A DNA stretch of 64,000 nucleotides from contig OZ320313.1 in the NCBI GenBank assembly GCA_976226885.1, forward strand, positions 47,492,001-47,556,000, in the 5' to 3' direction. The stretch comes from Iphione sp. A-MEVVRFRX5 (Eukaryota). The position numbers were made by a program, and so were the translations under genes. The notes below the pieces were generated by a model. It was given only the letters and a program-made list of their open reading frames with translations, did no database searches and had not been told where the DNA came from. The stretch's first letter is position 1, and each line of letters opens with the position of its first letter. Below are positions 5,921 to 59,287 of this stretch, one piece after another.

Positions 5921-6604
5921 CAGTAGACTCCCTCGATTCCGGACACCCTTCGTTCTGCGTCAAATCGTCCGCATTTGAGACGCGTCCGCATTGGAGACGC
6001 AGGGTACATACAGACCTGGGGTCAAACTAGAAAATGAACTCCCTTTCTCCCTCTCTCTCTAACCAGTTCAGGTCCAAAAAGTACTGAATTTGACCAGTAA
6101 AAGTCCTAAAAGTACTGAATTTGACCAGTAAAAGTCCTAAAAGTCCTGAATTTGACCAATTTAAGTCCTAAAAGTACTGAATTTGACCAGTAAAAGTAAA
6201 AAAAGTACTGACAACTTGAGCCTTCTTGGAGCCTCCCTGCAGCCCCAAATTCGCGCGACAACACCTCGTCCACAGGGGTTATTCATATCTACCTTTGAAA
6301 ATCACTCCTGGAGCCTCTCTAGGGCCCCAAATTCGCGCGACAACATATACAGAGGTCACCAGACTGATTTCAAGGTGTGAATTCGCATTTAAAAGTGTGA
6401 ATTCGCCCCCGTTTGAAGTGATTTTAGCTGTTTGTCGCGCGACCTTGAGCGTCCGGAGGGAGGCGCCCCCCTCTTTTTATCGTCCGCATTGGAGACGTCA
6501 GCTCATAATGCTTAACAATAGGTAACCAGTTCGTTCTGCGTCAAATCGTCCGCATTTGAGACGCGTCCGCATTGGAGACGCGTCCGCGGGGAGGGAGTGG
6601 CCTG
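5921..6604. mobile_element. TA-flanked pogo/Tc1-mariner-type MITE nested in the CMC-like element
   Basis: TA at 5919-5920 and 6605-6606. Imperfect TIR CAGTAGACTCCCTC / GAGGGAGTGGCCTG. Confidence 0.75.
6072..6212. repeat. 31-bp minisatellite, about 4.5 copies
   Basis: Unit GTCCTAAAAGTACTGAATTTGACCAGTAAAA, preceded by TTTCTCCCTCTCTCT. Confidence 0.95.
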
Positions 6605-8312
6605 TATTTCAAATCATGGAAAAACTAAAACACTCCTGCATAAAAAGTGAAATTACGCAAGAAAAGAGTATTCTAGGAGGATGGAAGTATATATTAAGAG
6701 AAACCAAGGATTATTTACATTTTGAATTTTGAATTTAAATGTTATATAGAAACATTTTGAAAACGTTTTCCCAAAACGTTTCGAAAACGTTTTTTAAAAA
6801 AGGTTTTTTGAAAACATTTGAAAAACATTATTAAGACCATTCACTTTAACATTTTAAAAACATTTTTTTTAAAACATTTTCAAGACATTTAGGAAAACGT
6901 TTTAAAAACGTTTTTGTGTTTGTTGGGAATAGCACCAGTAATACAAAATATACAAATATACAGTATATCCTCACAATTAGGGACACACTTTGTAATGGAT
7001 GTCCCTTATCGTCTGTTTTGGATGTCCCTTATCATCTGTATTTATTCCCACAGAACAATGTCTACCAATAACAAATCGATTAAGAGTAATATCTTTACAG
7101 GACTTTGTTTTACGAGAATTTACTTTCCCAAATGTTTCATACGTTAAATTGATGGTTAATCACTGTCATTCACCAAGCATTTTGCCTTTGTTCAATTTAG
7201 CCCATTATTGTTCCGTCTTTTATGCACGAGCATTCTTCCTTTCGAGTGGAGTGTAAATGGACTTGATAACAGTTCCTTGCCATTTAATGTGACCCAGATA
7301 CGTTTATGCAGCTGTACAGACATGCTACACACTGGCATAAAGAAGACAGACTAGTTCTGTTTTCCCTGCATCGAAAGCCTACAGCCGTATCCTATAAGAC
7401 AAAATGCATTATAAGAGAGAAATAAATTCTTTATCAACGCAAAGTTTGGCGAGTTCTTGGAGCCTATAAACGGTATACTCCTGCAAAGCAGAGAATGTGG
7501 CTGGTCTGTTTGTTTTAATATTCAGTTACCAGGTACCAAATGCCAACGTACCTATGTTGTATCAACAGGTGTGAAACATAGGGAACATTCTACGTACAGC
7601 TGTATGAAGTAGCAAAACAGTGAAAAACAACAAAATGCGGAGAAAATACAAGAAATAAACGAATCCCAAGGGATGGGTGGGAGAGATCTTACAGTAAAAT
7701 GCTGAAAGTATCATATGATTGTTGTCTACAAATAATATATGTAGCTGGAAACATGGATATTTTTTTTCTAGGCCTCACCATATCATAGATTAATGCATTT
7801 ATATTCTTACGTTTTGTCGACAGGCGACTCAATAAAGGCATTGGTAACAATGTCACAGATTTCTTTTATAGAATTCAACGGATTGTGTGAATTAAGCTTA
7901 TAGTAAGCTTGGGAGCATTTACAGATTTTATCACAATTTTATTGAATTTTTCCAATAACGATAGCAAGTCAGAAAACTCATCTACATTTTGTACCAAGGC
8001 ATGACTTCCACTACTGAAATATTTTTGTACTCAGGTCTTTATAGGAAGTGACAACTGTTATGTTTCATGGGCCCCCAAAAATATCTGTTTCTGGTAACAA
8101 GTCGACAAAAAGTCATTAGGTCGCTGGGTTTGTTTTAACACAAATTGTCCAATGAAAGGCTGGACAATACAGGAGAAACTCACTTTGCGACCACCACTTG
8201 GGTCGGCCCAAAATGGTCGTAATTCTGAATATGGTCGCAAAGTGATTGTGGAGGGGGGTCTGGGCTTGAAATCATATCCGTTTCTCCCTCTCTCTTTATT
8301 AACATATGAAAC

Positions 8313-8440
8313 GTCCAAAAAGTGCTGAATTTGATGACTTTAGGTCCAAAAAGTGCTGAATTTGATGACTAAAAGTCCAAAAAGTGATGAATTTGATGAC
8401 TTTAAGTCCAAAAAGTGCTGAATTTGATGACTAAAAGTGA
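8313..8440. repeat. 31-bp minisatellite, 4 copies
   Basis: Unit GTCCAAAAAGTGCTGAATTTGATGACTAAAA, preceded by TTTCTCCCTCTCTCT. Confidence 0.95.
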
Positions 8441-8467
8441 CTCAAAGAGGTGAGACATCAGAGAGGT

Positions 8468-8736
8468 CGCCCCCGACATCCCGCGACCACTCTCGGCCTC
8501 ACCCCTCCAGGGTGAGAGACCATCAAAGACGTCCCCATTGACGCCCCCGACATCCCGCGACCACTCTCGGCCTCACCCCTCCAGGGTGAGAGACCATCAA
8601 AGACATCCCCATTGACACCCCCAACACGCCCGCGACCACTCTCGGCCTCACCCCTCCAGGGTGAGAGACCATCAAAGACGTCCCCGTTGACACCCCCGAC
8701 ATCCCGCGACCACTCTCGGCCTCATCCCTCCAGGGT
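8468..8736. repeat. 74-bp GC-rich tandem repeat, about 3.6 copies
   Basis: Unit anchors at 8475, 8549, 8623 and 8698. Each full unit contains CTCACCC-ctcca-GGGTGAG. Confidence 0.95.
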
Positions 8737-9205
8737 CGGTTGCAAAGTGATATTAAAATGTACTAAAAAGGACCCTAGGAGGTGTGGTCGCAGGGTGAAT
8801 TTGGTCGCAAAGCAATATGGTCGCAAATTGATATGTAATCATATGGTAAATGTACTAAAATTGCTTCCGTTCCGACCCAAAATGGTCGCAATAGTCGATT
8901 TGGTCGCAAAGTGAGGAGGTCGCAAAGTGAGTTTCTCCTGTACTTTACAACCCTGACACAACCACTTCTACAAGTTACTAAAGTGCAGGAAGGAGAGAGA
9001 GGTGAGGACGAAGACAGAGGTAGTCTACGAAGGACTAAAAGAAGGGTGACATAAATGAAGAGATGCATGAGAAGGCTCGACAGGTTGAGAATAAAACAGC
9101 GAGTGGCAAGGAAGGGTAGTAGTGATAGTTTGATTAATTTAATGATTTGTAGGAGACCTGTATAAGATGGGCCGAGGCCCATACATGTTTGATGTTATGT
9201 TGCAG

Positions 9206-10568
9206 AGGAGATTACTTATGGTATTCGTGGAAGGATTTTCAAGCGATGCAGAAGAGGATGGGTACTCAGGAGACAACATGGAGACAGACGAAGATGAAGA
9301 CAACAATGAGTGGAGCACACCAGATGGTCATTATATGACGGACACAATGAATGGAAGCAGGAGAGAGGTAGGTCGGTTCGTGGAGTACTATGCGGGATTG
9401 AAATGTGCTTGTCGATGTGATTAGACGGTAATGGAAGATAGAAAACAGTGCAAATCATGATATGTATTACAGAATTTATGGAGCACTCATAGGAGTCAGT
9501 GGAGATTTTCAGGAATAACCACGTGTCAACAATTTCAACAAATGTAACAAGTGTAATGATAAATCCAGCAAATAGGTGTATAGGTGCAAGCCACAAAGCA
9601 ATGGGCGATGATGATGGTGATGGTGTTAATGGCGGTAGTGGAAGCAAGCCAAGTACATCGAGGCAGGGACAGTCGAATGGGCCCCGAGTCAAGAGTGATG
9701 GATCGACAGCAGCAGCAGCAGGAAGGGATAATGTTGTCAGCATGGTAGAGGCAAACGGTCAGAGGGTAAGGAGTACTTCGCACTTCCTGTATCATTGCAG
9801 TCACCATATGGAATTGCAAAGGTGTACAATTAACACATAATTGACTTAGTTATGTTTGTTACAGGGCAAGAGGAAAAGAGTCGACAGTACAACATCGCAT
9901 GAGATTAACATGACATACACATCTGAGAGCACAGAGCATCCTGTAAGTGTAAGTTAGGCAAGAATGGAAAACATATTAGCTAATGTCATGCAAAAAAATG
10001 CATTTATCACATATGGTACAAATGTATATGCACACTCAATGTCAGATGACACAACAGGAATGCACGCACTGTAAGTATACATAGTCGACTATGTATACTA
10101 TTTATGATGTACATATACACAAAGTTACATCCTGCAGTGATACTCTAGCCCTACAAATGACCCATGTAACAAATACGTTATGGCATGCATTTCATATTTG
10201 CCTGAAATGCTGACCTGCTCTCCAAATATGAGTGCAGTGTAAAAAAGAAAGTTCCTAATCCATCGTCCAACATTATACTATTACTATACTACTTGTATTG
10301 CAGAGTGTTAATAAACATTTTTCAATCCACTATTACATATGACTACTGGTACTGTATTCACCACCACCACCTTGTTTTTACGAATACAAAACATCAACTC
10401 CTATTTGTGTCCCTTCCTACTAATAATTGTTCTTTGATAATACACCCAGCTACTAAACAAGGTCACCTGACTCTACCTACACCTAGTGGTAAAAATTCAA
10501 AAATCAAAAATCAACAGTCAAAAGCAGAGAGGTGTAGCAGAGAAGACAACAAAATTGGCATTTTACAG
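9206..10568 (+). CDS. Putative spliced gene fragment, low-complexity/disordered protein (exons 9206-9371, 9584-9765, 9865-9942, 10046-10070, 10450-10568)
   Basis: All introns are GT-AG, and phases match without stops: 1, 0, 0, 1. The last three introns have good donors (gtaagg, gtaagt, gtaagt). The first junction (gtcggt donor, tatag acceptor) is weak. Start and stop were not found. Confidence 0.55.
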
Positions 10569-10752
10569 GTAAATATTGTTTTCTTTCTCCACAAGTTTTG
10601 TGATATTGAGCATGAGTAACCAGGGATTCACTAGGACATTTGCTAGTGCATTGCTAACTTGAATATATTTGAAGAATGGTTGTAAAATACCGCTACTCTT
10701 AGAATATGGTAGTGGGTGATAATAGGGGGCTTTATCAATTGTAATGAGAAAT

Positions 10753-11419
10753 CCCGCTAAAGATTCCTATAATGGACTTGTACTGGACCAGTACCGTTTA
10801 AGATAATGGTCCAGTACAGGCTATGTACTGGGGCAGTACAGAAGTGTAAATTAGCTGCCCAATGGCATGGTACTGGCAGTCCTGCACAAGTGCAGTGTAG
10901 GTCTGCCATTGGCCCTGCACTGGAATATATACCACAGGAAAAGTACAGTTACATTTTTCTTTTTTCTCCAAGTATTAAGTATATTTAAATCAACAGCATT
11001 ATGGCAAGCTTAATAAGAATCTACACAGAAATGATTTGGATATTATCACATTATTTTAAGCAGGGGATCTTTTAAATCTAAAGTAAAATTTTAAGTGGTT
11101 GATTTTTTTTTAGATCTGAACTAGCTGTACTGTTCCTATAGTATACATTCCAGTATTGGGCCAATGCCAGACCTGTACTATACCTGTATAAATTGCAGTT
11201 ACTGGGCCAGTACCAGTGTAACTGTACTGTCCCTGTAGTATATATTCCAGTACTGGGCCAATGTCGGACCTGTACTGTGCCTGTGCTGGATAGCCAGTAC
11301 CAGCCTGTTGGACAGCCAATTTGCAAATCTGTACCAGCACGGTCTTGATATCCTGTACTGGGCCGTTACCTTAAACTGTACTGGTCAGGTACAGGTCCAT
11401 TACAGTCATGATTACTGGG
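10753..11419. mobile_element. Fold-back MITE with CCC...GGG ends (CMC-like)
   Basis: The left arm CCCGCTAAAGATTCCTATAATGGACTTGTAC aligns with the reverse complement of the right end, CCCAGTAATCATGACTGTAATGGACCTGTAC. Arms are rich in CAGTAC/GTACTG. No clean TSD. Confidence 0.65.
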
Positions 11420-14400
11420 AGTCTGTGAATAGCAGAAATACCCAGATGATCTATAATCAGCTTTCAACAAGGCAAGAACATTGTTTCCCCTGTTCTTGTT
11501 AGTGCTTCTGCCTACGAACATGTGCCAGGTTCTAAGATTACATTACTTGTACGTTACTCTTTAAATTATGCAATGTACCGACGATATCGGAATGGATATA
11601 TATCTGTATCCTCAAGAACACAAGGATGGTATGAATGAATATAGAAGGGATGCTGGATATACACAGTCACATTCTTGCAAATATATCAGAATATACCCAG
11701 ATTTCGGGCGTTAGAGCTGATTTAATCAAACTACACGTAATAATTCTTAATCGGCATTCATGGTTTTCACTGAAACGCTACAAGAATTTGCCTGTCTTCA
11801 CTGCCGGTGACGAAGCTCTTTGTCCCCCCATATTCGTCTCCTGCCTATATTTTACAATATAAGCTGCAGTGACTCGATATTTAACTGGAAGACTAACAGA
11901 AATAACAGCACGGAAAGGATTGTTGGGTTAATACTATAATAGATACTTCTTACTGCTGAAAGATACATTGTATTGTTAGAGCAAGAATCCAACATTAATC
12001 TTCTTCCCTTTTTGGTTCTGTCAAACAGAAGCAAATGTTTCACTGAAAAAGGCGAACCGTATTCTTAGAATATATCCACCTCTTTTCAGAAGATCCGGGA
12101 GGCATGGATAGTGTATGCCAACTAGTCAGGCCCTTCCAGATTCAAGATGATGCAGGTATCAATTACATGTGACACATAATTATATGACTATATGTCTGGC
12201 GTATGGGACAATCTTCACTCAGTATTTCATAACCTTGGGTTGTCTAATTAGATTATAAATGTTTCCACCTATAATATGACATGTACATGTATATCCCGTT
12301 GGAACGCCGGTGTTCGTACAAGCAGCATAAGCAGACTGCCAAACATAAATGATGGCATATACATGTAGGCTAATGAAGGTTCTCTGTCGAGCGTAATGTA
12401 TAGCTTCTGTTGATGATCAATAAAAGTAATGAAGATTTGAATTCTCTCTAAACAATCCACATGGCTCACGTTTCACTATGGTTTAACGTCATAAGGACGA
12501 GCAATATCACTCCAGCTAGGCTATAGTCAAGAGCATTAGCCACTTATAATTGTTTGGAGTAGTACAAACTCGGGTAATTCATTATAACGTGTCCTTGGGT
12601 TTAATCCCAAAGGCACATGCACATGCATCTTAGGAATGAAATCAAGGAAAAACTACCATTATATTACGAGTGCACAATGCTAGGGAATTTCAAATTGAAA
12701 ACGTCATGTACATTTAGACACACTTATCATAGTTTCCGTCTCATTTGCGACAGAATGGAGACCCACAGATCGCCTAAGATCATTGCACCAAAATTCATGG
12801 TTCATTATCCCTTCTGGACATTCAAACCTCCTTTGTAATGATATTATGCACAAGAGATAGAGATACTCTGAAATCATTGAGCAGAGATGCCTTCCTACAG
12901 TACTGCCAGAGATGTTTGAGTAGATGCACCTCAGATCCCCACAAAACATGTAACATATACATGTAAATTGAAGGAATGCTTATACTGTGCTTCTTTTGAG
13001 GGTTAGTTGTATTTCTTTGTCAGTCTTGCACGTGTTTTTCCCTTGTTTATTTCTGTATTGTATTCCCCTCCTAGCCTCAGTCATGCTGTTGATCTCCTTT
13101 AAAAATCCCAATAAAGTAGCAATAAAATATTATTTTGTCCAAAGTGCCTTGTTGTGTACTATCGCTCTCTTCCCTTTTTTGAGCGAAGTCATTACCACAA
13201 CATGGTCTGTATTGCTACAAAACATTTGTGACCCACAAATACACTATACATAAAACATCAACAATGGTCAGATCTTTTGAAACAAATCTCTCCCTCAAAT
13301 CTACCCCTTATGGTAATTACATGACCCTTTTATCGAGTAGAAAAACAGTACCTTTTAACTAAGCAAAAGACCCCCATGAGTGTATGCTAACCTAGGATGT
13401 TTATGTATATATTTTTTATGTATATTCAAACTTGATATTTTTTTTATATTCAGTGTTTATTCAACTGTCATTATTCTACTGTTTAATATTGTTTCTAACA
13501 TGGACGTTCTGAGTTTACAGCTTATATTTCAGAACGTTACCCCTCAAGGACTTGACGAGGGGACTTCTAAATTATAGTGGCAGCCATCTTTTTTACAAAA
13601 GATAATTACAGCATTCTTAATTCATAAATCATAAATCAAAAAAAAATTGAACCAACCTATAATATACCGATATTATAGGGAGGATCAACTTTAACAAATC
13701 CACTTAAAAAGTAACCCATTGATATAAAAAAAACCTTTGGAAAAAATCTCCACTGCTATGCCTGATGAGACAGTAGTCGAAAGCATGTTGAATATGTGTC
13801 TACAACTATGGCCATTATTATCCACAAAGAACTGACATGGTGACACCTAAAGGGAGTATCACCATAGCAACAAGGAAACCCATATATTATATGTAACAAC
13901 AGACATAGGCTGGCCCAGTCACAACTCGGTATCATACCCACAAGCACAGAGCATTGCCACGTCAAATGTTCATTCATAAATCATATGTAAATCAATTAAA
14001 ACAAGTAAACCAAAGATTCCTGTATAGATAGCTTTATTGCCGATTGTACAGGGCATTTATGTACAAGAGACATTCGGTTACATGGTTAAGCATAGGAGCA
14101 TATTACAGTCTTCTAACAACTCAAAAAGGTACTGCAGTACCAACCTTTTAAACCTTATTACCCATTTAAGAAGGCCCTCTGAGGCCAAAATGCCAGATTC
14201 ATTTGTGAATGAAGCCATCCTTATTACACACACTGTTTTGTCATCAATGTGGGGCAGTATTACCATAAACACAAAACATATGAATATATGCATTCAGACA
14301 AAGGAAAACGTGAGAGACAAGAAGTCGGTTTTCTAAATATTGTTAGGATATTTTGCAACCATTAAACAGAGAATATACTTGATATATCATTTTAATCAAT

Positions 14401-16301
14401 CGTCAAACAATGTCAATGTGTAATACACTTAGGACAAACAGTCAGAAGTTGCTACTATAGTATGTGTGTTTGTCGGAGCGGTAAGTTACATAGAAAATGA
14501 GGTCACCGGGAGCAGCTCCATTCCCGTGGGTCACCGTCTGTCTGAATGCGTAAAAAATTAGCCTCAGATGAGCTAGCTCTGCACAATAACTAGCCAACGA
14601 ACAACCGGTCCTTGAAGTCTTTTTGACAGCTAATCAATTATGCTGTCAATCGTTGACAGTGGGCTCAAATATTTGGGGCAAAGCGCTAGGTGACGTACTA
14701 AATATGTAAGAGCAGCCTCTAGGGGTTAACTAAGGCTGGCACGTCAACCGCACCCACGAACCCGGACTTTTGGCCTTTTAACTACCCACCCATCCATCGA
14801 CCCGATTAATTTCACCTACAAAATTGTTGTCTGACTGGACAACGCCTTTATGATGTCTCTGTTGCATGCAGAAACTTAACAGGAGCTCACAATTTCGACA
14901 TTATAGTGAAATCATGACTCCAACAATGCCCTGCCGAAAACTCAATGTTTTTAAGAGAGGAGAGGGTTTTCACTTAATCGGTTCTGAAAGGGCGTTCATT
15001 GTAAAAGTAACTATGATTGAAATGGAAGTATATTCCTAACAGTGTTATATCTTCCTAGTAACAGGATGCTTTAATTTGTCTCTCGTACCTATAGCAGCCA
15101 AGATTTGTTTTCACAGGATTGAAAACAACATTAAGAGTCCAACAGTGATTGGATGAGATATAACTGAATATTTCACATGAAGTGCATGATATAATGATAT
15201 TTTATATCTACATTATACATTGCATTGTAATGGACAAAAGCGCCAAGGAACGAGAGTAAGATTGTGGGAAAAGCAAAAGGTGGTTGGCACAGACAGAGAA
15301 TGGTGTGTTGGTTGGCCAAAAGCATCCATGGAATAAAGATTTGGAATTAAGATCTGGAATTAAGCTTACTGACTCTGTTGCATATTTAGATATTCATGGA
15401 AGTGGAAATGTGTTAAGTAAATTGGAGCTTCTGGAGAAGGGAATCACTGAAGCTTGAAGAGCTGAAACTGATGATCACCTTTGGTGATGAAAAAAAGGAA
15501 GGAAGAGAATTGGATAACAGACAATATTAGGGGCTTGAGACAAAACAAGGAATATTACTTTTCTATTTTAAAGTTAGTGACAACATCGATAATATAATTT
15601 GGGAAGTTTTACAAGCAATTAGTCTCCAAGTAAACTAGGAAACTACACAAGGCCTATTTGCTACCGAACTCTGTTACTGCCGTTCCTATACCTTCGATAC
15701 ACATTAATAGTAAATACGTTCGGGTCCATGGAATATCCGGTCTATCCCTTTGGCGTCATTTTTCCCAAAGCGAAGTATGACTTGGATGAATACTATACAT
15801 ATATATGTTGACGACTGTGGATACGATGCCACGGGTTGGTATCATCTCTAAGAGGCTGAAAGATTGTGTTGGATTATGTTGGATATTATAGAACTAAAAA
15901 CGCGTCGCCTAAACAATATTCAACATTCTTAGATGGGTTAGCTACTGTTGTTGTCTCACTATATGATCAATACTTAAATACAGTATATAATATCAGCTGC
16001 AAATACTTCAGCGTATCTTCAGGATTTGGTGCTTATTTCATGACCCGGCGCCCTGACAAATATGAAATGTACATCCTGCTTTTCATATACTAAAATAGAT
16101 GTTGTGGTTTTAACAGTTCTGCTGTTATGTGCTATACCCACGTATGCAAGTACATAGTTCAGACCTGCCCCCAGTAGTGTGGACTGTGGGAGGACCACTC
16201 TAGGGTACTTTCATAGCGGTGTACCCATGTACATGGGTTGTCCAGACACCCTCCCGGTGTTGGACTACCAGATCAGTGAAGGAGTGGTCCACAAGTACAC
16301 C

Positions 16302-16528
16302 TTAACATATGTTAATTCTTTAAAATTTATACCAGAGAAAAAAATAGATGTGTTTGTTGAAAGTGAGGCTTATCAGTGGAAATTTTTGGCTTTTTGTTGA
16401 AAGTGAGACATATTGACAGACATTTTATGGCTTTTGGTTGAAAGTGAGGCACATCTGTGGAAATTTTTGGCTTTATATGTAAATGATATACAAATTAGAT
16501 AAATTTTAAAGAACTTAACATATGTTAA
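16302..16528. mobile_element. MITE with about 29-bp TIR and internal 40-41-bp repeat
   Basis: TTAACATATGTTAATTCTTTAAAATTTAT (16302-16330) versus its inverse at 16499-16528 (1 indel). Three internal GTTGAAAGTGAG units. Confidence 0.75.
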
Positions 16529-22285: not shown

Positions 22286-22452
22286 NNNNNNNNNNNNNNN
22301 NNNNNNNNNNNNNNNNNNNNNNNNNNNNNNNNNNNNNNNNNNNNNNNNNNNNNNNNNNNNNNNNNNNNNNNNNNNNNNNNNNNNNNNNNNNNNNNNNNNN
22401 NNNNNNNNNNNNNNNNNNNNNNNNNNNNNNNNNNNNNNNNNNNNNNNNNNNN
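22286..22452. other. Assembly gap (167 N)
   Basis: Run of N. Confidence 1.
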
Positions 22453-24983: not shown

Positions 24984-25633
24984 GGCCGGCTTTCCATGCA
25001 TACGGAGTTTTTTCCGCACTGCGTGACCCATCCGGAAATTCGGCCCATTTTCCCGTATCTCCGGACAGGTGCTTTCCATGTGTGCGTGCGTGCGTGCGTG
25101 CGTGCATGGGTGCATGTATCAGTTGAAATTGTGAAATTTTTTTTGTGGAGCAAATCAGTGGAAATTGTGCGGTTTTTCATGGAGTTTGAAGCAGATCTGT
25201 GGAAATTGTGCGTTTTTTCATGGAGTTTGAAGCAGATCTGTGGAAATTGTGCATTTTTTCATGGAGTTTGAAGCAGATCGGTGGAAATTGTGCGGTTTTT
25301 CATGGAGTTTGAAGCAGATCGGTGGAAATTGTGCGGTTTTTATCCAAATGATATGCAAATTAGAAAAAAATTCACAACATCTATCATGTGATAGACAGTG
25401 TCTATCCAGCTGAAAACATCCATCTCTCTATTCTGTTGGACTTCATGGCTCTCCGGAGTCCGGAATCCGGAGAAATTTACGGCCCAGGTTCGTTTTTGAC
25501 CTCCGGACCCGGACCACGGATACACGGACACGGATACATGGGTGGCTCTCTGTTAAAATCAGTGAGTTCGTTTTTTTCCGCATTTCCGCACACGTGCTCC
25601 GGATGCATTTTCCGTATACATGGGAAGCCAGCC
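24984..25633. mobile_element. PIF/Harbinger-type MITE carrying (GCGT)n and a 41-bp tandem repeat
   Basis: 22-bp TIR GGCCGGCTTTCCATGCATACGG / CCGTATACATGGGAAGCCAGCC (3 mismatches) with TTA on both sides. Confidence 0.85.
25158..25360. repeat. 41-bp tandem repeat, about 4.6 copies, ending in AAATGATATGCAAATTAG
   Basis: GTGGAAATTG recurs at 25158, 25199, 25240, 25281 and 25322. Confidence 0.95.
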
Positions 25634-28761: not shown

Positions 28762-28932
28762 NNNNNNNNNNNNNNNNNNNNNNNNNNNNNNNNNNNNNNN
28801 NNNNNNNNNNNNNNNNNNNNNNNNNNNNNNNNNNNNNNNNNNNNNNNNNNNNNNNNNNNNNNNNNNNNNNNNNNNNNNNNNNNNNNNNNNNNNNNNNNNN
28901 NNNNNNNNNNNNNNNNNNNNNNNNNNNNNNNN
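28762..28932. other. Assembly gap (171 N)
   Basis: Run of N. Confidence 1.
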
Positions 28933-45244: not shown

Positions 45245-45400
45245 TCAGAGATAACTACGAGTGAAGATGGTATAAGGGTCTTCAACATGGATGAAACGGG
45301 ACTTTCTACAAGCCAAAGCCTATACACCAGCTACTACGCTTCCAGGGAGTGAAATTAAGCAAAGTAGTGTGCATTGGCAGTATACGCTAACCCCGCACTA
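45245..45400 (+). mobile_element. pogo/Tigger-family (DDE_1) transposase relic
   Basis: IRVFNMDETGLST at 45272-45310 is the first-Asp motif of pogo-type transposases. The surrounding frame is broken. Confidence 0.45.
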
Positions 45401-45910: not shown

Positions 45911-46120
45911 GAGTACACCTTACATAAGTTAATTCTTTAAAATTAATGTAAGAGAATACAATATAGCCTTTTTGTTGAAACTGAGGCACATCAATGGAAA
46001 TTTTGGGTATTTTTGTTAAAGGTGAGGCATATTGTGGAAATTCTGGGTCTTTTTGTTGCAAGTGAGGCATATCAGTGGACATTTTTGGTCTTTTTATGCA
46101 AATGAAATGCAAATTGGGGA
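45911..46120. repeat. Second copy of the 16302 repeat family (one arm plus 40-41-bp units)
   Basis: AGTACACCT...GTTAATTCTTTAAAATT, three GAGGCA...TGGA(A/C)ATT units, ending ATGCAAATGAAATGCAAATTGG. Confidence 0.75.
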
Positions 46121-47256: not shown

Positions 47257-47437
47257 CAGTGGAACCTCTGTTCTATGGACAGCAAAGGGACTGACCGATT
47301 AAAAAGTGTCCAAAAGAGGGGTGTCCTTTATAGCAGGGGTATTTAAACATGCTTATATAGCTTTGGTTCTGTTTCCAGCCTGTACATACTATAAGGTGTC
47401 CTTTAAGGGGGCCTCCCTTAGTGGACAGGTTCCACTG
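47257..47437. mobile_element. 181-bp TA-flanked pogo/Tigger-type MITE
   Basis: TA-CAGTGGAACCT ... AGGTTCCACTG-TA. Confidence 0.88.
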
Positions 47438-47551
47438 TATATTGCATAAGTGGGAATATTCTCTTTTCAAATATAATCATTTAAGACAAACTGGAAATTT
47501 GGACACATACTTTAGGACATTTATAATCAGATTAATGGGCAAAATAGAAAC

Positions 47552-49110: not shown

Positions 49111-49159
49111 CTTTGTAAACATTACAAAGATTGGGCAATAAACAAATACAAATACAAAT
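49111..49159 (+). mobile_element. LINE/SINE 3' tail: stem-loop, AATAAA, (CAAATA)n
   Basis: CTTTGTAA-aca-TTACAAAG hairpin, AATAAA at 49137-49142, then CAAATACAAATACAAAT. Confidence 0.65.
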
Positions 49160-50601: not shown

Positions 50602-50605
50602 ATGG
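50602..50605 (+). CDS. Candidate start micro-exon (ATG G) of the MS4A-like gene
   Basis: ATGG|gtaagt is a consensus donor in phase 1. The matching acceptor is ambiguous. Confidence 0.4.
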
Positions 50606-51170
50606 GTAAGTGCCCTGTGCTTCATTTTTGTATGTAAGCAAAATCATTGAACAGTTGAATCACGGAATTAAACTATATATTTTTCGGGTATTGATTATAA
50701 TACTATAAATGCTATAACTTACATGAAAAAATAATCCCAACAATAGTCGTCTAAAATGCCAGTTTGAACAATCAATCGTATCCAGTTGTCCTTTTTTAGA
50801 ATGTTGGTTCGTCTTAATTCTAATGCTGTGTCTGATGTATAGTAGTAGTCAAAATATCTTTACTTTCGATTGTCCTTGATTCTTTCACCAGACAAAGTTA
50901 AAAGCTTCTTCAAGACGTCGACTGTAGGAGGAAACGCTAATGTGAGCAAATGACGTATTCATTCGTGTATGCAAAAACACCAAGTATATTTGGAACTCAG
51001 AATGAATTATTGCACTCTATTGGTAGGAAATTGCTGAGACCTTTTGAACGATACTATGGAAAGAACCCTGACTCAGCAATACTTATTGCATTTACATTTC
51101 TGGCATTAGTTGTTTATCAAAAATCACTTATATACATATTTATATAGATTTGGGATGTAAGTGTCCAAAG

Positions 51171-51547
51171 CCGAAGCGCAGGGGATACTGAATATCTTTC
51201 TTGAACATTCCATCCAGAATCAAGCTAATGCCCCAGGGACAGAATTAAACCACCTTCACCAGCAGCGGTCTGTTTCCAACGGCAACTATCGGGCAGTAGC
51301 CCAGGCGGAGCGATCACGACCTGACGGCAGGAACCAGACCAATCAGGACGAAAGCAGATGCTGTGGCTTTCTGTTCCATGTACTGGATGAGTGTGGCTTC
51401 AGGACTTACTATTCCATCCGTGTACTTCGTCTTCTGGCAGGCCTCCAGTTGGCTTGTGGTATGATTATGATCGGCCTCCAGACACTCGCTGTGATGAAGG
51501 GGCTGGCACTAAGCAAAGCGTTCTCCGGCATTTGGTGTGGTTGCGTG
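51171..51547 (+). CDS. MS4A/CD20-like tetraspan protein, exon with N-terminus, TM1 and start of TM2
   Basis: LAGLQLACGMIMIGLQ...FSGIWCGCV matches the CD20-family LGxxQIxxG...GxxxWxG pattern. Donor GTG|gtaaga in phase 0. The 5' boundary is uncertain. Confidence 0.8.
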
Positions 51548-52104
51548 GTAAGAGCCTCACAAAAGTGAGCCCTACATTGTTATTTCAATATGGTTCTATA
51601 AAACGGAAGGACGATATAGACACTGATAAGTTAACCTTCTGTAACTGGAGCTCCCAAATTTGATACCTCTTGATGATTTCCCAGCACACAGTAATATTGG
51701 GCCGCTTTTAACCGTGCACCCTAAATCTTTTTATCTGACGTCAACAGAGATGGTGGGAAGCAGGTGAAGCATGTGATTCATCATCTCTATTAAGATTCGC
51801 TATTACAGTTAAGGTATACATTATATTTCATCATCAGAACAGCCTATTATCCGCGGCCTCGGTGATGGGGTCAATTTTAGCACCAAACCTAGAAGCTCTG
51901 CTCAAAGGGTTGGACGAACGGGAATCAGGGGACTATTAGCTAAAGCCTCGTATATGTGTCACCGAAGCTGAGGACTCAACGCTTTGAAACGATCCAAAGT
52001 TTGAATCCTCATAGTCAAAGAACAGGTAGTGATCTACTATATATACACATATACATATATAAACAGATTTACACGTCTTTTAACTTTTTTTGTTAATCTT
52101 TCAG

Positions 52105-52164
52105 ATTATTATGACTTCAATCCTTGGATTTGTAACAGCGCATAAAGACAGAAACTGGAACTGG
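52105..52164 (+). CDS. MS4A-like exon (IIMTSILGFVTAHKDRNWNW)
   Basis: tttcag| acceptor, |gtaaga donor, 60 nt, phase 0-0. Matches the family FIISGxLxI segment. Confidence 0.85.
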
Positions 52165-52390
52165 GTAAGATAGTTTTAACGATTTTTGGAAATGGGTAAG
52201 GCATTGGAAAGTGTGGGGGTTGACAGATGGTAACATTTTGAACGCAAGAATTTACGGTTGGCCAACACTTCCTGAATGGGGGTCTGTTTCACCCAGAGTC
52301 ATCCAGATATGGAGATCATTTGGGTATGGAAGAAAGCCCTCTCACACCATCTAGCAGGGAAAATTTGCAAAATAGTAAAGTATGCATACA

Positions 52391-52615
52391 TTCTCTGATG
52401 TCATCAGGCCCTAATTCGCTGCTAAACCTTTATTATTTCAGTAATTATCACACTCGATATACCCTCGGTCATTCTCCCTGATGGCCTCAGGCAGCAATCC
52501 AATGATAAACCTTTGTTATTTTAGTCATTGTCACACTTGATACACCCTCACTCGTTCTCTCTGATGTCCTGAGGCCCTAATCCAATGATAATCCTTTGTT
52601 ATTTCAATGTTTATC
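52391..52615. repeat. 83-bp degenerate tandem repeat, about 2.7 copies (intronic)
   Basis: CTGATG anchors at 52395, 52478 and 52561. Confidence 0.8.
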
Positions 52616-53039
52616 AGGCATGGAACACTCTCATTTGTCAATTATATGAAAACAGAGTATTGAATTACTTTGGTGGATTATAATATCAAGCGTTCAGGTT
52701 GAAACATATGGAAACAGAGTATTAATTGATAATATAAAAGGTTGGTTGCATGTCTGGACATTCAGATATGAAGATCATTCAGATACGGAGTGTTCGGAAA
52801 GAGCGGGCTGACTGTACTGTTTGAATAAATGCTTTACATTCACTATTTATTCTGTATCTGACCTGTTATTATGTAAACCAATGCAGCAGTTGTAACTTTC
52901 AACCACTCTTTCCAACAATAAGTTCGTTCCTAAAAGTAAAATAATGTAGTGTGCGCATGTAATAAGAGCGTATAGTGCTAGAAGGATGGTTGGTCCGTGA
53001 GAACGGTCTGTGACGGAATCCGCGATCCGGGATAGGGTG

Positions 53040-53155
53040 CAGTCCGTGACGACTTCCGGACTGGTAGAGATATTGCGTAATAGAGGTACCTCACAGATTG
53101 TGATACTGCGTAGTAGGGGTACCTCGCGGATTGTTTATTTACTGCGCATAAGCAG
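53040..53155. repeat. About 33-bp degenerate tandem repeat
   Basis: TGCGTAATAGAGGTACCTCACAGATTGT / TGCGTAGTAGGGGTACCTCGCGGATTGT. Confidence 0.7.
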
Positions 53156-53429
53156 ACGTCTAGACATCCTATTTTTAGCAACTCTTATGTAACACTGTCA
53201 TATATAAACCCATGTTTTCTGGAATAAACAGACCCTTTCTCTTTGCACGCTGGAGAGAGACCATTCCATGCACAACAATTTAGTGTATTTTGGAGTGAAA
53301 CTGATATTCTACTTTTTCTCAAGATTATTTTACTCAATCCGTTGACTTCTCATTTCTCTCTACGCTAGTCACGTTACATTTATATTCAGATTGACACCTA
53401 TATCTTTACTTATTTTTTTATCCTTGCAG

Positions 53430-53585
53430 CTTAGAGGGTTTCGTCTTATGTCACTTGTTTGTATCCTTTTCGCTCTTGGACCTTTAATCAGTGCAATCCT
53501 AGATATGATAACAACCTGCTGGCCAAAGCTACTTCCAGATATTGTCCAGAAACTTGGAGGCTTGCGAATTTTACCAACCTGTCGT
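53430..53585 (+). CDS. MS4A-like exon with TM3 and extracellular loop
   Basis: tttttatccttgcag| acceptor, |gtaagt donor, 156 nt, phase 0-0. Reads LRGFRLMSLVCILFALGPLISAILD. Confidence 0.85.
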
Positions 53586-53840
53586 GTAAGTACCAGTACC
53601 CATAGACATGATTAATATCTGCACACTTAGATTCTTGTAATATCATTCTGAATATAGAGAATAAATTGGTAATTCCATCATGAACATTTATCGTAAAAAG
53701 CAACACCAATAATAGATCGTCATAGGGCCAATTCGGTAAGCTGAAGCAGTTTTCTACGTGTTTGAGGAAAAGTTACAGCCACAGATGAGAACTGTTTGTG
53801 AGCACACATCACTTTCAGTCCTTAGTAGGAAGAACATTTA

Positions 53841-55563
53841 GGCCAAAAAAATAAGTGTGTTTCTGGTTACATTTAGCCAAAAACCTAGGTAGGGAAGGGA
53901 ATCTTTTTTTTATTTTTTTTACATTTCTCTTCTAGTTTTGAACAATAATAAGGACAATATGGAAAAGCCCTGGGTTGGTTTCATCACTACATGCCTTGTA
54001 CATAGGGTACACATACTAACATTTCTCAAAATAGATTTGCTCCTTTCTGCACCTGAGCCAGCACAGTAGTAGTATCATACCAGCCAATGGAAGAGCCATC
54101 ACATGAGGTAACCATGTGGCCCTAACAGGCCATCTTTATAAGATAAGCTAAAATATCACTTGCACTCTATACAAATAATTCACATTGCTTTGCTAAATTT
54201 TAATATTTAAAGTCTATTATTTTGGTATTGGCCTTGCATATTTCCCTCCTCTTCTATCTTTCACCTAAATGGTGAATTTCCTTAGATACATGTTTCGCTG
54301 GCCAGTACTCTGTATTTTGTGAAACTATGGATCATACCAGGACTGTTTCCTTATACATGTACTGTGTAGTGTGTACAGTACATACACTTGAGTGTCTACC
54401 TCCGACCAGTGGTTGGGGCTGACCTCAAATGGTCAGAATATCAAGTTTGGTCAAAAATCAATTGGATAGGTGGTCAATCTTAGAATCAATATGTATAGAT
54501 GAATACTCAATAATATGTATGGAAAACGGCTGTGTTAATGAATAAATTTCTACATATCACAGGGCCCCTCCAAATATTGGCAAAACTCAACCAAATTAAT
54601 CTAAAAGTCGGCAAAACTCAGCCAAACTCGTCCAAAGATCAACAAAAAGAGAGGGGGAGCCATGACCAACACCTGGGGGTGGCACGAACTATTCAATGAG
54701 TAGCTTAACCCTTTGATACATTAACTGGTGGAAGGGAGTGGTGACAAACACCTGGAGGAGGTGCGAACTCTTCAATGGGTAGCTATCCCTTTGATACATT
54801 ATGAACTGGTGCAAGGGAGGGGAGCGGCAGCCGTGGGCCGGTCAGAAATCAATAGAAAAATAAACTAGATTTGATCTTTTATCAATTGGTCATAGGCTCA
54901 AAATTGCCACAAACCAATCTGGTCACTAATTGATAACCTATCATATTGATTTTGTATAGGCAAACCTTTGGTTCCCAGCTCAACTGCTGGCATTGGCCCA
55001 TTGGGTCGGAAATCGATGAGGTCACAAATAGGGACTTGACTGTATAGCATGTTTTCATGTGTAACTATGTTTTTGAATTGGAAGGTTCCCATTTTTCATG
55101 GCCATGTATAGATGTTTTGTATAGCAGTACAGGAGAAGTGGGATTGAAATGACCTTGTTAGCTATGTTTCATATTAAAAAGCAAGATATTTCCTCACAAC
55201 TGTTCCAGGGTTTCACCATTTTTCTGTAATATTTGCATGATTTCACTGTTTTTCAGTAAAAATTGCAGGAGTTTTGTCATTTTCTACCCAAATGGGCATG
55301 AACTTTGTTTATTTCTTGCCCACTTTAGATTCACTATTCCTCTATTTTTTTTACCACTTTGTATGAACTTTTCAGGATGATTTTGTTGAAGTTGCATCAA
55401 TTTTGTTGTTTTTCTATTAAATTTACCAAAATACACACTGTGAAAAAATGCATCTAAGGAAATTCAGCCTTGGGAACTCTTTGAGGCCAAAACATTTTTA
55501 GGTAGGGAGAGGTTTTACTAGGTAGGGGTGGGTAACCAGAAACATGCCTATTTTTAGGGGGCC
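53841..55563. mobile_element. Degenerate Harbinger-like element in an MS4A intron
   Basis: The left end GGCCAAAAAAATAAGTGTGTTTCTGGTTAC resembles the inverse of the right end GTAACCAGAAACATGCCTATTTTT...GGCC. Flanks TTA/TAG are not identical. Contains a roughly 79-bp duplication at 54655-54830. Confidence 0.5.
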
Positions 55564-55772
55564 TAGTCCATGTGAATGACTTGCTCTTTAGCACTTAGAG
55601 ATTAAATCAAAGCCAGTATCTTTTCTTATTCAAAATTTTCTTCTTATTCCTGTTTTTCTCCATCCACAGTCCATCCCAACTGGACTGTTCCACTCTGTTG
55701 AAATGGGGATAGCCAACCGTATTCAGCCCAGTTTTACTCATCAGAACTTGTTCTTCTTCCTTCCTTTCTCAG

Positions 55773-55883
55773 TTGGTGGAGAGCATTGACGGCCCAATGA
55801 TAGCAATTAGTATAGCAGAAGCTGGTTTCGCCTACATCTCTGCCAAGGTCACATGCTGCTGCTGCATACCATGCCTATGCTAA
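55773..55883 (+). CDS. MS4A-like terminal exon (TM4, Cys-rich C-terminus)
   Basis: Long pyrimidine tract plus ag| in phase 0. Reads LVESIDGPMIAISIAEAGFAYISAKVTCCCCIPCLC*, where IAE corresponds to the family TM4 xxE motif. Confidence 0.85.
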   Translation: MVESIDGPMIAISIAEAGFAYISAKVTCCCCIPCLC

Positions 55884-57139
55884 CCGGGAACACTCTGTTC
55901 GCTAGAATTGCTCATGTTATGCAGGATATTTGTAATATATAAACTCAGTTCTTTATAATTTCTATATTGATACACAAGTAGTGCCTTCTGCAATAATGGA
56001 GCTGATTCTATTCTGTGGGTGTGCAAAGGCCACTCAATAAGGGATGTGCTGCATTTTCAAATGTACTGCACAGTCAGGGCCTCATCTACTGTTTCTCTGG
56101 ATTTCAGTTTCCATTTTTCTAAAGGCATAGCAAAAAGATCTGGTGTAGTAACAATGAACCGGTATAGTCTGGATATTTATATGTGTGTGCACAGTTTCAG
56201 CTTGAAATAGTACAGCACTTAGCCATACAATTTGCTCGTCTGTGATATGATTCCTATCGTTCAATATGTTCATAGACATGACATGTAGACACTATCTACA
56301 CGCATGACAAGTGGAAGTGGTGAAAGTGCTGGCCAAAATCTCTGAATGCACCTTTAGACTTATCTAAATTATGTAATATACACATGTACAGTCTATTGCT
56401 GGTTTGCAACCACCCCTCTATTTAAAGCTCAAGTGGTCACATTTGTGGTTGCGGTTACATAACAGTCTGAGCTCAAATATCACAGGATTGCATCATCAGA
56501 TTATATCTTATCATGAGTTTTGCCATTTTTCAGTTGGATCTGCATGAATTATACCATTTTTTGGATGAATTTCCATGAGTTTTGCTGATTTTGCAGCCAA
56601 AATTACATGAATTTGACCATTTTTTAGCATTAAATATAGTGTCAAAACCCCCACAAAGGTGCGAAACATCATGGTCACACCTCTGTACCTAGACAATGAA
56701 TATTCTTTCAACTCCCTGAGCTTGGACTTCTGATGTGTCACTTTCATATCTCTCCCCACTAATTTACACTGAAATCCAATAGAAACATGTGTGGTGACAG
56801 GCTGATTTGGCTGCAAAACAGTCTGCCTGAATAGCAATATCTTGTTAAACATGTTAACAGCAAAAATAATTCCATTCCAAGCTCAAGCGGTCATATTCAA
56901 GGTTTTGGTCACTAAATGGTATGCTCGTAAATTAACATTTGACTCTAACTAGCTTCGCTTTTAATATAGTTTATTGTTCGATATCTTGTATTTTTTCTGC
57001 TCATATGTACATTGAAGATTTAAGGGAAGATTAACTCTTAACTTAATTATGTTACTCTCTATTATTGACGTGAGATGAACGTCAAGAATGAAAGTTCACT
57101 AGTTTATGCCAACAATAAACCGTGCTGCAAAAAAACAAT

Positions 57140-57795
57140 AGCTGGGTAAATGGGGATTTCTTGGATTTAGTTAGAGAAAAACACTGAGCAGTAAATATTT
57201 TCTGACAGACAGGAAGGCTGGAAGATAAACTCAAAGCTAAACTGGTGGTGTACCTTGTCAAGAAAATGGCTACTTCGCTGAGGTAGCGACATTATTGCAT
57301 TGCATTTTTTAGCAGCATAGGAGCTACAATCAGCTGACAGTTTACTGGCAATTCCATCGAAGCACCTGAAATCTATTTTCTTACTTGTACAGAGATTCTA
57401 GATATTATGAACTGTTTGCTTGGAAATGAATTCTATACCTGCAAGTTTGAAGTTAGCTAAAGTGACACCGTTAATTATATCTGGAAGTAAAGGTTCTTAT
57501 GAATTATAGATCTATTAGTCAGCTGTCCAATTCAGGTAAAAAGCTATAATACAATAGAATTTTCTCCTATCTGGAGGATAATAAGTTACTGACTGATTAT
57601 CAATTTGGTTAATAGAAGGACTGATGATGCTGTGTATGCTTTGACCAATACTGTATGTAAATCTATGACTATGAGCCTTTTGACTCAGGTTTTCATGCAA
57701 TCATTTTGAAGAAGTTGCTGTACCTGGGTTTGACTGAAATTGTTCCATGAGTTAAATGCCATTTGACCAATACAAAACAACAGGTTACGGTAAAA
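57140..57795 (+). mobile_element. Degenerate CR1/L2-type LINE RT fragment
   Basis: WVNGDFLDLVRE (PWIT-like), IPASLKLAKVTPL, YRSISQL and HAIILKKLLYLG...HLTNTKQQVTV, with stops and frameshifts. Confidence 0.7.
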
Positions 57796-58319
57796 TAACG
57801 TCACTTAATGCAAATCGTGGTAAAATGACGTTATTTTACCGTGACTTGTGGCAAAAATGTTCCTAAAAAGTCATGCTATGGCTCAGTTTCTTCCTTGGGT
57901 CATTTGAGCTATAGCATGGGAACATTATGAAGGATATTCAGTGGCCCTTTTGGGCACAAACTTGCAGAAAAATGATGTTGTTTACAAACAAAGTGGCAGT
58001 CTTCAACTTGATCCTGTCAACAAATGTTCATAGGGCCACATACTCCTTCATAATGGTCCTAAAGAGACATACTATGAGCTATTTTTTTCCTTAGACCATT
58101 AGCTTTGATATATATGCTTCATTAAAATTGGACAATTAAAAGTGATGGTTTCAGTCTTGTGTATCACTGAGTGAGGGGACATGGTACATTTGAGCCCAGC
58201 TTATCACTAACCCAGTCAGAGGGACTACCTAAACTTGGGTTAAACCACAGCTTAGTCAATCACAGGATTAACTTTAATCTTATGTGCTAACATCCAGCCA
58301 TAAGAGTCATTTAAGAATA

Positions 58320-59287
58320 CAATCGAACCTCGTCAACCAGAGACTTGACAACCGAACTACCACATTAACCATATGCTTTGGTTGTACTACTATAACTTGT
58401 ACTAGAGTTAAAACCCTATTTTCAACCATCACTTCAGCCCAAGTTCAAATGGTTAGAATAGCGAGAATGGTTAGAAATCGATCTTTACACAGTTCCCATT
58501 TAGTGCTAAATTTCACAAGTAAAAGTCCAAAAAGTGCTGAATTGGACAAGTAGAAGTGCAAAAAGTGCTAAAATTGACGAGTATTCAGGTTTAAAAGTGC
58601 ATACTAACAACTGTGGTGTCACCTCGTAGGTCCCTTTCACACTTCTGTCATTTTAGTTGGAAATCAATAATCAAACACAGTAGAAATGACGCTAGGGTGG
58701 ACGGTCAGAAGCTGAGATTGATGGAAAATTGATTTGGTCAATCCGTTTGTATATTGATTTACTTTAGGAAGTATTTCCGTTCCAATCTCAAGCAGTCTTA
58801 CTAGCAAATTTGGTTGGAAATCGATGTAGTTGGAAATAGGGTTTCAACTACATTTAACCGGATGTTCATTTTCTGTAAGCAAACTGTATTTTCCAAATTT
58901 TAGAGATAAATATAATCGAATTAATGTTGTTTTAACTGGATTTAATGTGTCAGAGCAGGAGCAACTATCACATATACATGTGCGATTGAGGCCACAACCC
59001 TTAAACAGTAGAAACAATAAAGGTCATCAATGTGGAGGGGAGGGATTCTCTTTCATATTGCCACTAGAGCAAAAGAAACATTAATTCTACTAACAGAGCT
59101 GTGTGAATGCATAGAACATGTCTGGTTCAATTAAAACAACATTAATTCTACTCTAAATTATGTATACTTTACTATCATGCAAGTTTTCCCCACTAGATGT
59201 ATGTTTGCTTAGTTCAACAACTGGGTTATTTGGTATCTGGACAAATTTGGCAGGAATTTCAGTTGTCCGGTTGATAAGGTTCAACTG
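58320..59287. mobile_element. TA-flanked pogo/Tigger-type MITE with 31-bp minisatellite remnant
   Basis: TA-CAATCGAACCTCGTCAACCAGA versus the inverse of TCCGGTTGATAAGGTTCAACTG-TA. Internal AAGTCCAAAAAGTGCTGAATTGGAC at about 58522. Confidence 0.7.

What the first reader, a model, noticed from the sequence alone, without database searches (positions are those of the whole stretch)
6040..58590. One 31-bp minisatellite module is carried by three MITEs with different TIRs
The unit GTCC(T/A)AAAAGT(A/G)CTGAATT(T/G)GA... occurs at 6072-6212, 8313-8440 and about 58520-58580. Each array lies inside a separate TA-flanked element whose TIRs differ (CAGTAGACTCCCTC, CAGGAGAAACTCACTTTGCGACC, CAATCGAACCTCG). 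The first two arrays share the upstream anchor TTTCTCCCTCTCTCT, and each array has its own homogenised variants (CCAGT versus TGACT). Inference: an end-less repeat module that spreads by being copied into, or captured by, several pogo-type MITE families, or a Helitron-like core that prefers such elements.
Basis: partly seen in the sequence, partly recalled or inferred. Interest (0 to 1): 0.7.

Follow-up and report, generated by a model that had tools for sequence, protein, structure and literature searches.

The report
Shared minisatellite in pogo-type MITE superfamily
A 31-letter tandem repeat sits inside thousands of small jumping-gene relics with differing ends, but those relics are diverged, recombining members of one pogo-type family group, not unrelated elements that each captured a free module.

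Summary
31-bp arrays lie at 6072-6211, 8313-8438 and 58502-58583. The first two sit in clean TA-flanked TIR elements, E1 (5921-6616) and E2 (8170-8941). Family copies place E3 at about 58405-58850, with a different, decayed TIR.

Genome-wide, the 22-nt core of the unit occurs 22,892 times against 2 for the control. In a positional sample of 40 arrays, every one lies in or beside arms of this MITE group. None is free-standing.

The ends are not unrelated:
- Family consensuses of E2 and E3 align over their whole length.
- E1 aligns with both over the left arm.
- All share one layout: arm, G-box, (CT)n, 31-bp array, a longer repeat, arm. The array always has the same orientation.

E2's terminal 30-mer lies 670-830 bp from pogo (DDE_1) transposase hits at seven loci.

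There is real reassortment. Among E1-armed copies, array type (CCAGT or TGACT) conflicts with the arm tree.

Verdict: this is a diversified, recombining pogo-type MITE superfamily with a conserved interior. It is not an end-less or Helitron-like module. The 22-nt core is more conserved than the arms, and that is unexplained.

The parts
5921..6616 (+). E1: TA-flanked MITE, 696 bp. TA at 5919-5920 and 6617-6618. TIR at 5921-5934 and 6603-6616.
   Evidence: The family has thousands of first-look candidates. Twelve aligned copies share exact ends next to TA.
5950..6001 (+). E1 left subterminal block holding the 17-nt CGTCCGCATTGGAGACG motifs. It is repeated in direct orientation at 6531-6582.
6018..6061 (+). 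E1 pre-array anchor: a G-box followed by (CT)n.
   Evidence: Anchor similarity among the three family consensuses gives z = 5.8-9.8.
6072..6211 (+). 31-bp array, 4.5 copies, CCAGT spacer type.
6531..6582 (+). E1 right subterminal block, a direct copy of 5950-6001.
8170..8941 (+). E2: TA-flanked MITE, 772 bp. TIR at 8170-8195 and 8916-8941. GGTCGCAAAGTGA motifs lie in both arms.
   Evidence: The left-end 30-mer has 2,532 hits in the genome.
8253..8295 (+). E2 pre-array anchor: a G-box followed by (CT)n.
8313..8438 (+). 31-bp array, about 4 copies, TGACT spacer type, with alternating TTTAA and TAAAA endings (62-bp dimer).
8470..8736 (+). CpG-rich 74-bp tandem repeat, 3.6 copies. This is the second repeat module of E2. 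A diverged 63-bp version occurs in many E1-armed copies.
58405..58850 (+). E3: decayed copy of a third MITE family, with boundaries taken from the family alignment. This copy lacks the G-box/(CT)n anchor.
58502..58583 (+). 31-bp array, 2.6 copies, decayed, CAAGT/CGAGT spacers.

Best explanation
The three elements belong to one diversified superfamily of non-autonomous, pogo-type DNA transposons (MITEs). They have a TA target duplication, CAG termini and repeated subterminal GTC-containing motifs.

The superfamily has a common modular interior, always in this order and orientation: a G-box, a (CT)n microsatellite, the 31-bp minisatellite, and usually a longer 63-83-bp repeat.

Families differ mainly in their arms. 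The arms form a graded series of related TIRs and presumably track different pogo transposases (inferred). E2's terminal 30-mer is found next to pogo DDE_1 genes (shown by coordinates only).

On top of common descent, interior segments reassort among lineages. The likely route is template switching or recombination at the shared internal homology during repair after excision (inferred). As a result, array type and arm type disagree.

The array is a resident part of these MITEs. It is not a mobile unit of its own.
For: Abundance and arm types:
- The 22-nt core has 22,892 hits against 2 for the control.
- Left-end 30-mers: E1 2,193, E2 2,532, E3-like 1,016. Controls give 0.
- Of 40 arrays sampled by position, 31 have both arms of type E1, E2 or E3. 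Two have further arm types with the same layout. Seven are truncated or interrupted. None is free-standing.

Homology between families:
- E2 against E3 consensus gives z = 18.6 (left terminus), 6.0 (middle) and 14.1 (right terminus) relative to dinucleotide shuffles.
- E1 against E2 and E3 gives z = 5.1 and 5.6 for the left terminus, and 6.7 and 9.8 for the anchor.
- The first 28 nt of the TIRs are 68-79% identical.
- The commonest E3-like TIR variant is intermediate between E3 and E2.
- Orientation and order of modules are constant in all classified copies.

Reassortment:
- All four combinations of array type and right-arm variant occur.
- The arm tree needs 6 changes of array type. Starred branches force at least 3 to 4.
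- The AU test rejects a single CCAGT clade, p = 0.011.

Pogo link:
- Seven perfect E2 30-mers on contig C1 lie 670-830 bp beyond DDE_1 hits. I estimate about 0.02 such pairs by chance.
Against: - E1's middle and right arm show no significant similarity to E2 or E3 (z from -0.2 to 3.2). Common descent of the whole E1 element is therefore not shown.
- Unit consensuses are 84-90% alike between families, while arms are 57-77% alike. Plain vertical descent does not predict this.
How far MITE and pogo agree is unknown.
- The array sample was drawn from perfect 22-mer hits on one 14-Mb stretch.
- The CCAGT group was named after the first tables were seen, which weakens the AU test.
Confidence: 0.68

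Rival explanations
1. Cargo-centred descent (re-arming). The conserved interior (G-box, (CT)n, array) is the lineage that persists. It has repeatedly acquired new termini from different but related pogo transposons or MITEs, by recombination or abortive gap repair. The arms look homologous only because the donor pogo families are related.
For: - The interior core is more conserved than the arms.
- At least five arm types carry it.
- E2's 30-nt end is identical to that of elements carrying DDE_1.
- Arms and array are discordant.
- TGACT arrays are 91-98% identical across E1-armed and E2-armed copies, while neighbouring modules are about 70% identical.
- Zero of 7 pogo-associated ends have the exact E2 linker-array junction, against 29 of 57 other perfect ends.
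Against: - E2 and E3 are also homologous through the middle region, not only the arms.
- The divergence order is roughly the same for arms and units.
- No autonomous sequence was available, so it is unknown whether the arms are copied from pogo ends.
Confidence: 0.2
2. One reading: a free, end-less minisatellite module, or a Helitron-like core, that is copied into or captured by unrelated MITE families independently.
For: Copy-to-copy blastn between the three window elements finds only the array, plus a short anchor between E1 and E2. Some E3-family copies lack the array.
Against: - No free array was found among the 40 sampled.
- Orientation and position are constant.
- The arms are homologous at consensus level.
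- The shared block has no termini of its own.
- No Helitron-type ends were seen.
Confidence: 0.06
3. Simple deletion derivatives. The whole MITE interior, including the array, is the non-coding end region of the autonomous pogo element, so the array is just a pogo UTR or promoter repeat.
For: An earlier scan note, which I did not test, reports pogo elements in this genome with a repeat-built 5' region. E2's 74-bp repeat is CpG-rich.
Against: None of the seven pogo-associated E2 ends has the exact 35-nt linker-array junction at the MITE distance, while half of the other perfect ends do. This is a coordinate argument only, and a diverged junction would be missed.
Confidence: 0.06

Closest known systems
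Tandem-repeat-containing MITEs of bivalves (DTC84 of Donax trunculus, pearl elements of Crassostrea virginica); Satovic and Plohl 2013, PMC3879986
   Same: Composite high-copy MITEs with a central short array of tandem repeats, a microsatellite at one end of the array, and flanks holding inverted repeats. Copy number is variable. The paper already proposes that the flanks act as a 'cassette' for the internal repeats (abstract).
   Different: Those elements have a putative AA target duplication and core repeats much longer than 31 bp (my recollection, not checked here). Here the duplication is TA, the ends are 14-26-nt CAG TIRs, one family is linked to pogo transposase, and the unit is 31 bp.
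Satellite-like arrays carried by Helentron non-autonomous elements in Crassostrea gigas; PMC7492417
   Same: Short tandem arrays are dispersed genome-wide because they ride in non-autonomous DNA elements (title and abstract).
   Different: The carrier there is a rolling-circle Helentron. Here it is a cut-and-paste TA/TIR element. I read only the abstract.
pogo/Tigger-derived MITEs (for example the human MER2 group and plant Emigrant/Lemi1); from my own knowledge, not checked here
   Same: TA duplication, CAG-starting TIRs, and termini shared with a pogo-type DDE_1 transposon.
   Different: As far as I know, those families are not described as sharing a conserved internal minisatellite across several TIR types.

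Membership tests
pogo-type (Tc1/mariner superfamily) MITE | TA target-site duplication | tested here: met
   E1: 11 of 12 left flanks and 12 of 12 right flanks are TA. E2: 11 of 12 left and 12 of 12 right. E3 family: TA at most copy ends. No empty site was examined.
pogo-type (Tc1/mariner superfamily) MITE | Terminal inverted repeats, here starting with CAG | tested here: met
   In the window, E1's right arm and both E3 ends are decayed.
pogo-type (Tc1/mariner superfamily) MITE | Termini shared with an autonomous element that encodes a DDE_1 (pogo) transposase | tested here: inconclusive
   E2: seven perfect 30-mers lie 670-830 bp from PF03184 hits with 526-614-aa open frames. This rests on coordinates only, because the sequence could not be fetched. 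E1 and E3: no coincidence among the places listed.
pogo-type (Tc1/mariner superfamily) MITE | Small, non-coding and high in copy number | tested here: met
   The elements are 446-772 bp. The window has no ORF of 250 aa or more outside 44-4283. Each family has thousands of ends.
pearl/DTC84-type (Helentron-related) tandem-repeat MITE | Microsatellite next to a central tandem array, between flanks holding inverted repeats | tested here: met
   (CT)n lies directly upstream of the 31-bp array in E1, E2 and most family copies.
pearl/DTC84-type (Helentron-related) tandem-repeat MITE | AA at the termini as the putative target duplication (PMC3879986) | tested here: not met
   The flanks are TA.
Helitron or Helitron-like core | 5'-TC and 3'-CTRR ends with a 3' hairpin, no TIR, no duplication (from my own knowledge) | tested here: not met
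   The shared block has no termini of its own. Its left edge varies between families. It is always enclosed by TIR arms.

The most novel reading that the evidence does not exclude
The 31-bp array may be a cis element that works regardless of which transposase is used, and that is kept by selection in the master copies of several MITE families. The 22-nt core is nearly invariant across arm types. Each 31-bp unit carries three 5-nt A/T tracts, one per 10.3 bp, which is in phase with the DNA helix. A typical array of 4-5 units could therefore be intrinsically curved and help the two ends of a short element meet, or it could bind a host factor. Under this reading the conserved cargo, not the termini, is the unit that persists, and it is repeatedly re-armed with ends from different pogo lineages.
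Probability: 0.15. Interest if true: 0.7.

Novelty: new variant of a known kind. Interest (0 to 1): 0.42.

Why it matters
MITE families are usually defined by conserved ends and free-drifting interiors. Here the reverse holds: at least five arm types share one interior, and its 22-nt core is better conserved than the TIRs.

This gives a tractable system of thousands of copies and several arm types, with a likely active pogo partner for at least one family. It could be used to study how non-autonomous elements exchange parts and switch transposase. It could also test whether an internal repeat can be selected for helping transposition.

For annotation, it warns that repeat libraries built on TIRs will split one evolutionary unit, and that libraries built on interiors will merge several.

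Tried and rejected
- The unit is not a copy of the subterminal motifs. Local alignment of unit dimers to the arms is no better than for shuffled units (z from -1.2 to 1.9).
- Rfam has no match inside the elements' arrays. The only hits are sub-threshold and lie in or beside the neighbouring AT-rich repeat.
- Two pairs of E2 copies lie 2.6 kb apart. Only the MITE parts match, so there is no larger composite unit.
- In-place homogenisation of arrays after insertion is not indicated. Within families, identity to consensus is similar for the array and the left arm (0.973 against 0.953, and 0.986 against 0.978).
- Helical phasing of the A/T tracts is only suggestive. Power at the 10.3-bp harmonic is reached by 1-5% of shuffles. 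It is not significant once all periods are allowed, and the idea was formed after seeing the data.
- The per-position conservation is biased, because units were picked by their core. I rely on the family consensuses instead.
- A full-text search for the unit found no paper.
- No sequencing run was listed for the window.
Full report
**What is in the window**

TRF reports 31-bp arrays at three places:
- 6072-6211, 4.5 copies
- 8313-8432, also read as a 62-bp dimer over 8309-8438
- 58502-58583, 2.6 copies

A 17-nt core pattern hits ten times, all inside these arrays. Shuffles give 0.78.

The first array lies in E1, 5921-6616. E1 is flanked by TA and has CAGTAGACTCCCTC on the left. Its right arm is imperfect in this copy. 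It also has a 52-nt subterminal block that recurs in direct orientation at 5950-6001 and 6531-6582.

The second array lies in E2, 8170-8941. E2 is flanked by TA and has a 26-nt TIR. Many GGTCGCAAAGTGA motifs lie in its arms. A CpG-rich 74-bp repeat spans 8470-8736.

Both arrays are preceded by TTTCTCCCTCTCTCT.

The two assembly gaps (22286-22452 and 28762-28932) are far from all of this. They play no part and were not touched.

**The third element**

Fifteen of 100 shuffles do as well.

Genomic copies of window 58250-58950 match only query positions 152-608. Aligning nine of them gives TA-flanked ends with the consensus CAGTCGAAACCCTATTTCCGACC and its complement.

The window copy, about 58405-58850, is old. 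Both termini are mutated and it lacks the (CT)n anchor.

Within this family some copies have the array, some have only the anchor, and some have neither.

**Abundance and where arrays live**

| Pattern | Hits in the 1.18-Gb assembly | Control |
|---|---|---|
| 22-nt core, up to 2 mismatches | 22,892 | 2 |
| E1 left-end 30-mer | 2,193 | 0 |
| E2 left-end 30-mer | 2,532 | 0 |
| E3-like left-end 30-mer | 1,016 | 0 |

Full-length copies of E1 and E2 include the array. Their alignments end exactly at the TA.

I took the arrays listed first by position on contig C1 (0.39-13.8 Mb). That gave 40 arrays in loci L037-L086. I compared their flanks with the family consensuses. They classify as follows:

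| Class | Arrays |
|---|---|
| Both E1 arms | 22 |
| Both E2 arms | 8 |
| Both E3 arms | 1 |
| Only one arm, or interrupted | 7 |
| Further arm types, same layout, CAG ends next to TA | 2 |
| Free-standing | 0 |

In every classified copy the left arm is upstream of the array and the right arm downstream, on the same strand.

Conversely, 15 of the 17 perfect E1 left ends in the first 14.4 Mb of C1 have a perfect unit within about 250 bp.

**Are the ends unrelated?**

Copy to copy, blastn sees only the array, plus about 40 bp of anchor between E1 and E2. Family consensuses tell a different story. The table gives z-scores against dinucleotide shuffles.

| Pair | Left terminal 83-96 nt | Anchor | Middle | Right 130 nt |
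|---|---|---|---|---|
| E2 vs E3 | 18.6 | 5.8 | 6.0 | 14.1 |
| E1 vs E2 | 5.1 | 6.7 | not significant | 3.2 (2 of 300 shuffles as high) |
| E1 vs E3 | 5.6 | 9.8 | not significant | not significant |

Identities:
- First 28 nt of the TIR: 68-79%
- Left terminal region: 67-77%
- Right 100 nt: 58-70%
- 31-bp unit consensus: 84-90%

The commonest E3-like end in the genome carries TTTGCGACC, as E2 does. It is therefore intermediate between E2 and E3.

All arm types share the same order of parts:
1. TIR
2. Subterminal GTC-containing motifs
3. G-box
4. (CT)n
5. A short linker
6. The 31-bp array
7. Usually a 63-83-bp repeat
8. Subterminal motifs
9. TIR

**Reassortment is nevertheless real**

Among E1-armed copies there are three array types:
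- CCAGT, as in the window
- TGACT, the same as E2's, including the alternating TTTAA and TAAAA endings
- Older AGT-type spacers

TGACT arrays in E1-armed copies are usually followed by a diverged version of E2's second repeat.

All four combinations of array type and right-arm variant (GCGGGG or GCAGGC) occur, and left-arm variants are mixed as well.

On a likelihood tree of the concatenated arms (34 rows, 177 columns):
- Array type needs 6 changes, where 2 is the minimum.
- Well-supported branches force at least 3 changes for CCAGT and 4 for TGACT.
- No bootstrap tree makes either type one clade.
- The AU test rejects a single CCAGT clade, p = 0.011. I had seen the tables before naming the group.

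TGACT arrays are 91-98% identical across E1-armed and both E2-armed subtypes. The alignments that run on into the neighbouring module fall to 72-80%.

One E2 subtype lacks the G-box and (CT)n, and joins the array through the same CTCTCTGAAAC linker seen in many E1-armed copies.

So parts are exchanged. The exchange is between related elements, and it keeps order and orientation. That fits recombination or template switching at shared homology (inferred), not insertion of a free module.

**Link to pogo**

A scan of the genome for Pfam DDE_1 (PF03184) gave 3,156 first-look candidates. 150 were scored, most with long open frames.

Seven of the 64 perfect E2 30-mers on C1 lie 670-830 bp beyond the end of a DDE_1 hit, facing inward. 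I estimate about 0.02 such pairs by chance, from 64 ends, 31 hits, a 2-kb window and a 179-Mb contig.

None of those seven ends has the exact 35-nt linker-array junction at the distance seen in MITEs. Twenty-nine of the other 57 perfect ends do. The autonomous element therefore probably lacks that junction. A diverged one would escape this test, and I could not read the sequence.

No such coincidence was seen for E1 or E3-like ends among the places listed.

**What remains unexplained**

The 22-nt core differs at only 2 positions among the three family consensuses. The 9-nt spacer differs at 5, and the arms are 57-77% alike.

Within a family, array and left arm have decayed about equally since insertion. 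The conservation therefore acts on the master copies, not in place.

Two ideas were tested:
- The unit does not resemble the arm motifs.
- Each unit has three 5-nt A/T tracts, one per 10.3 bp. The three between-family changes inside those tracts are all A/T swaps. The matching Fourier harmonic is reached by only 1-5% of shuffles, but this was noticed after the fact and does not survive correction for all periods.

I keep this as the novel case, not as a finding.

**Comparison with what is known**

The layout is that of the tandem-repeat MITEs described in bivalves: a microsatellite next to a short internal array, between flanks with inverted repeats. The authors of that work already called the flanks a cassette for the repeats (PMC3879986).

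Dispersed satellite-like arrays on non-autonomous elements are also known from the Pacific oyster (PMC7492417, abstract).

Those carriers have AA ends and are Helentron-related. Here the carrier is a TA/TIR element, and one family is tied to pogo.

I therefore rate this a new variant of a known kind. The concept is published. New here are the carrier type and the number of arm types sharing one interior. It is also new that the internal core is better conserved than the TIRs.

A full-text search for the unit itself found nothing. The organism is not known to me, and no sequencing run was listed.

**Earlier notes of this scan**

A first-reader note on another piece of this genome reports the same 31-bp cassette in four TA-MITEs with different ends. 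It is not independent evidence, but it fits the genome-wide counts.

Notes on pogo elements with repeat-built 5' regions, and on several Tigger lineages in this genome, are untested leads for the partner question.

Noticed in passing
window 5181-5780 and 6750-6915: AT-rich tandem repeats based on an 11-bp AATGTTTTTAA-like unit lie on both sides of E1. The two sides have inverted similarity (for example 5709-5783 against 6745-6896). E1 and its near flanks may be nested in another, foldback-like element. A sub-threshold Rfam MIR6140 hit (35.6 bits against a gathering score of 140) lies at 6746-6917.
   Followed up: no
window 16353-16508, 45968-46105 and 25149-25341: A second dispersed minisatellite. 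Arrays of 40-41 bp at 16353 and 45968 have closely similar consensus units (…GTTGAAAGTGAGGCATAT…GTGGAAATTTT…). A 41-bp array at 25149-25341 (4.7 copies, 95% matches) shares the GGTGGAAATT core. These may be MITE-borne too.
   Followed up: no
L060 (G000:C1:5412730-5415751): An E1-armed copy whose CCAGT array runs directly from a truncated unit into an E2-type GGTCGCAAAGT motif, followed by E2 interior. This is either a nested truncated E2 or a template-switch junction inside the array.
   Followed up: partly
L077 (G000:C1:10072254-10075275) and L084 (G000:C1:13546789-13549810): Two further arm types carry the same G-box, (CT)n and array. One has ends CAGTAGAACCCCGCC / CAGGAAAACCCCTC and GTCCGCTGT motifs. 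The other starts CAGCAGACACCCACAGG and has GAGTGGTCNCCC motifs.
   Followed up: partly
L050+L053 (G000:C1:3032693-3038353) and L086 (G000:C1:13824934-13830702): At two separate places, two complete E2 copies lie 2.6 kb apart in the same orientation. Only the MITE parts are similar, so this may reflect local hopping or chance.
   Followed up: yes
genome G000: There are 3,156 first-look candidates for the pogo DDE_1 domain. 144 of the 150 scored hits have no stop inside the matched domain, and most lie in open frames of several hundred aa. This suggests a large and possibly active pogo population.
   Followed up: no
window 44-4283: Long ORFs of 277, 793 and 277 aa lie at the left edge of the window.
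   Followed up: no
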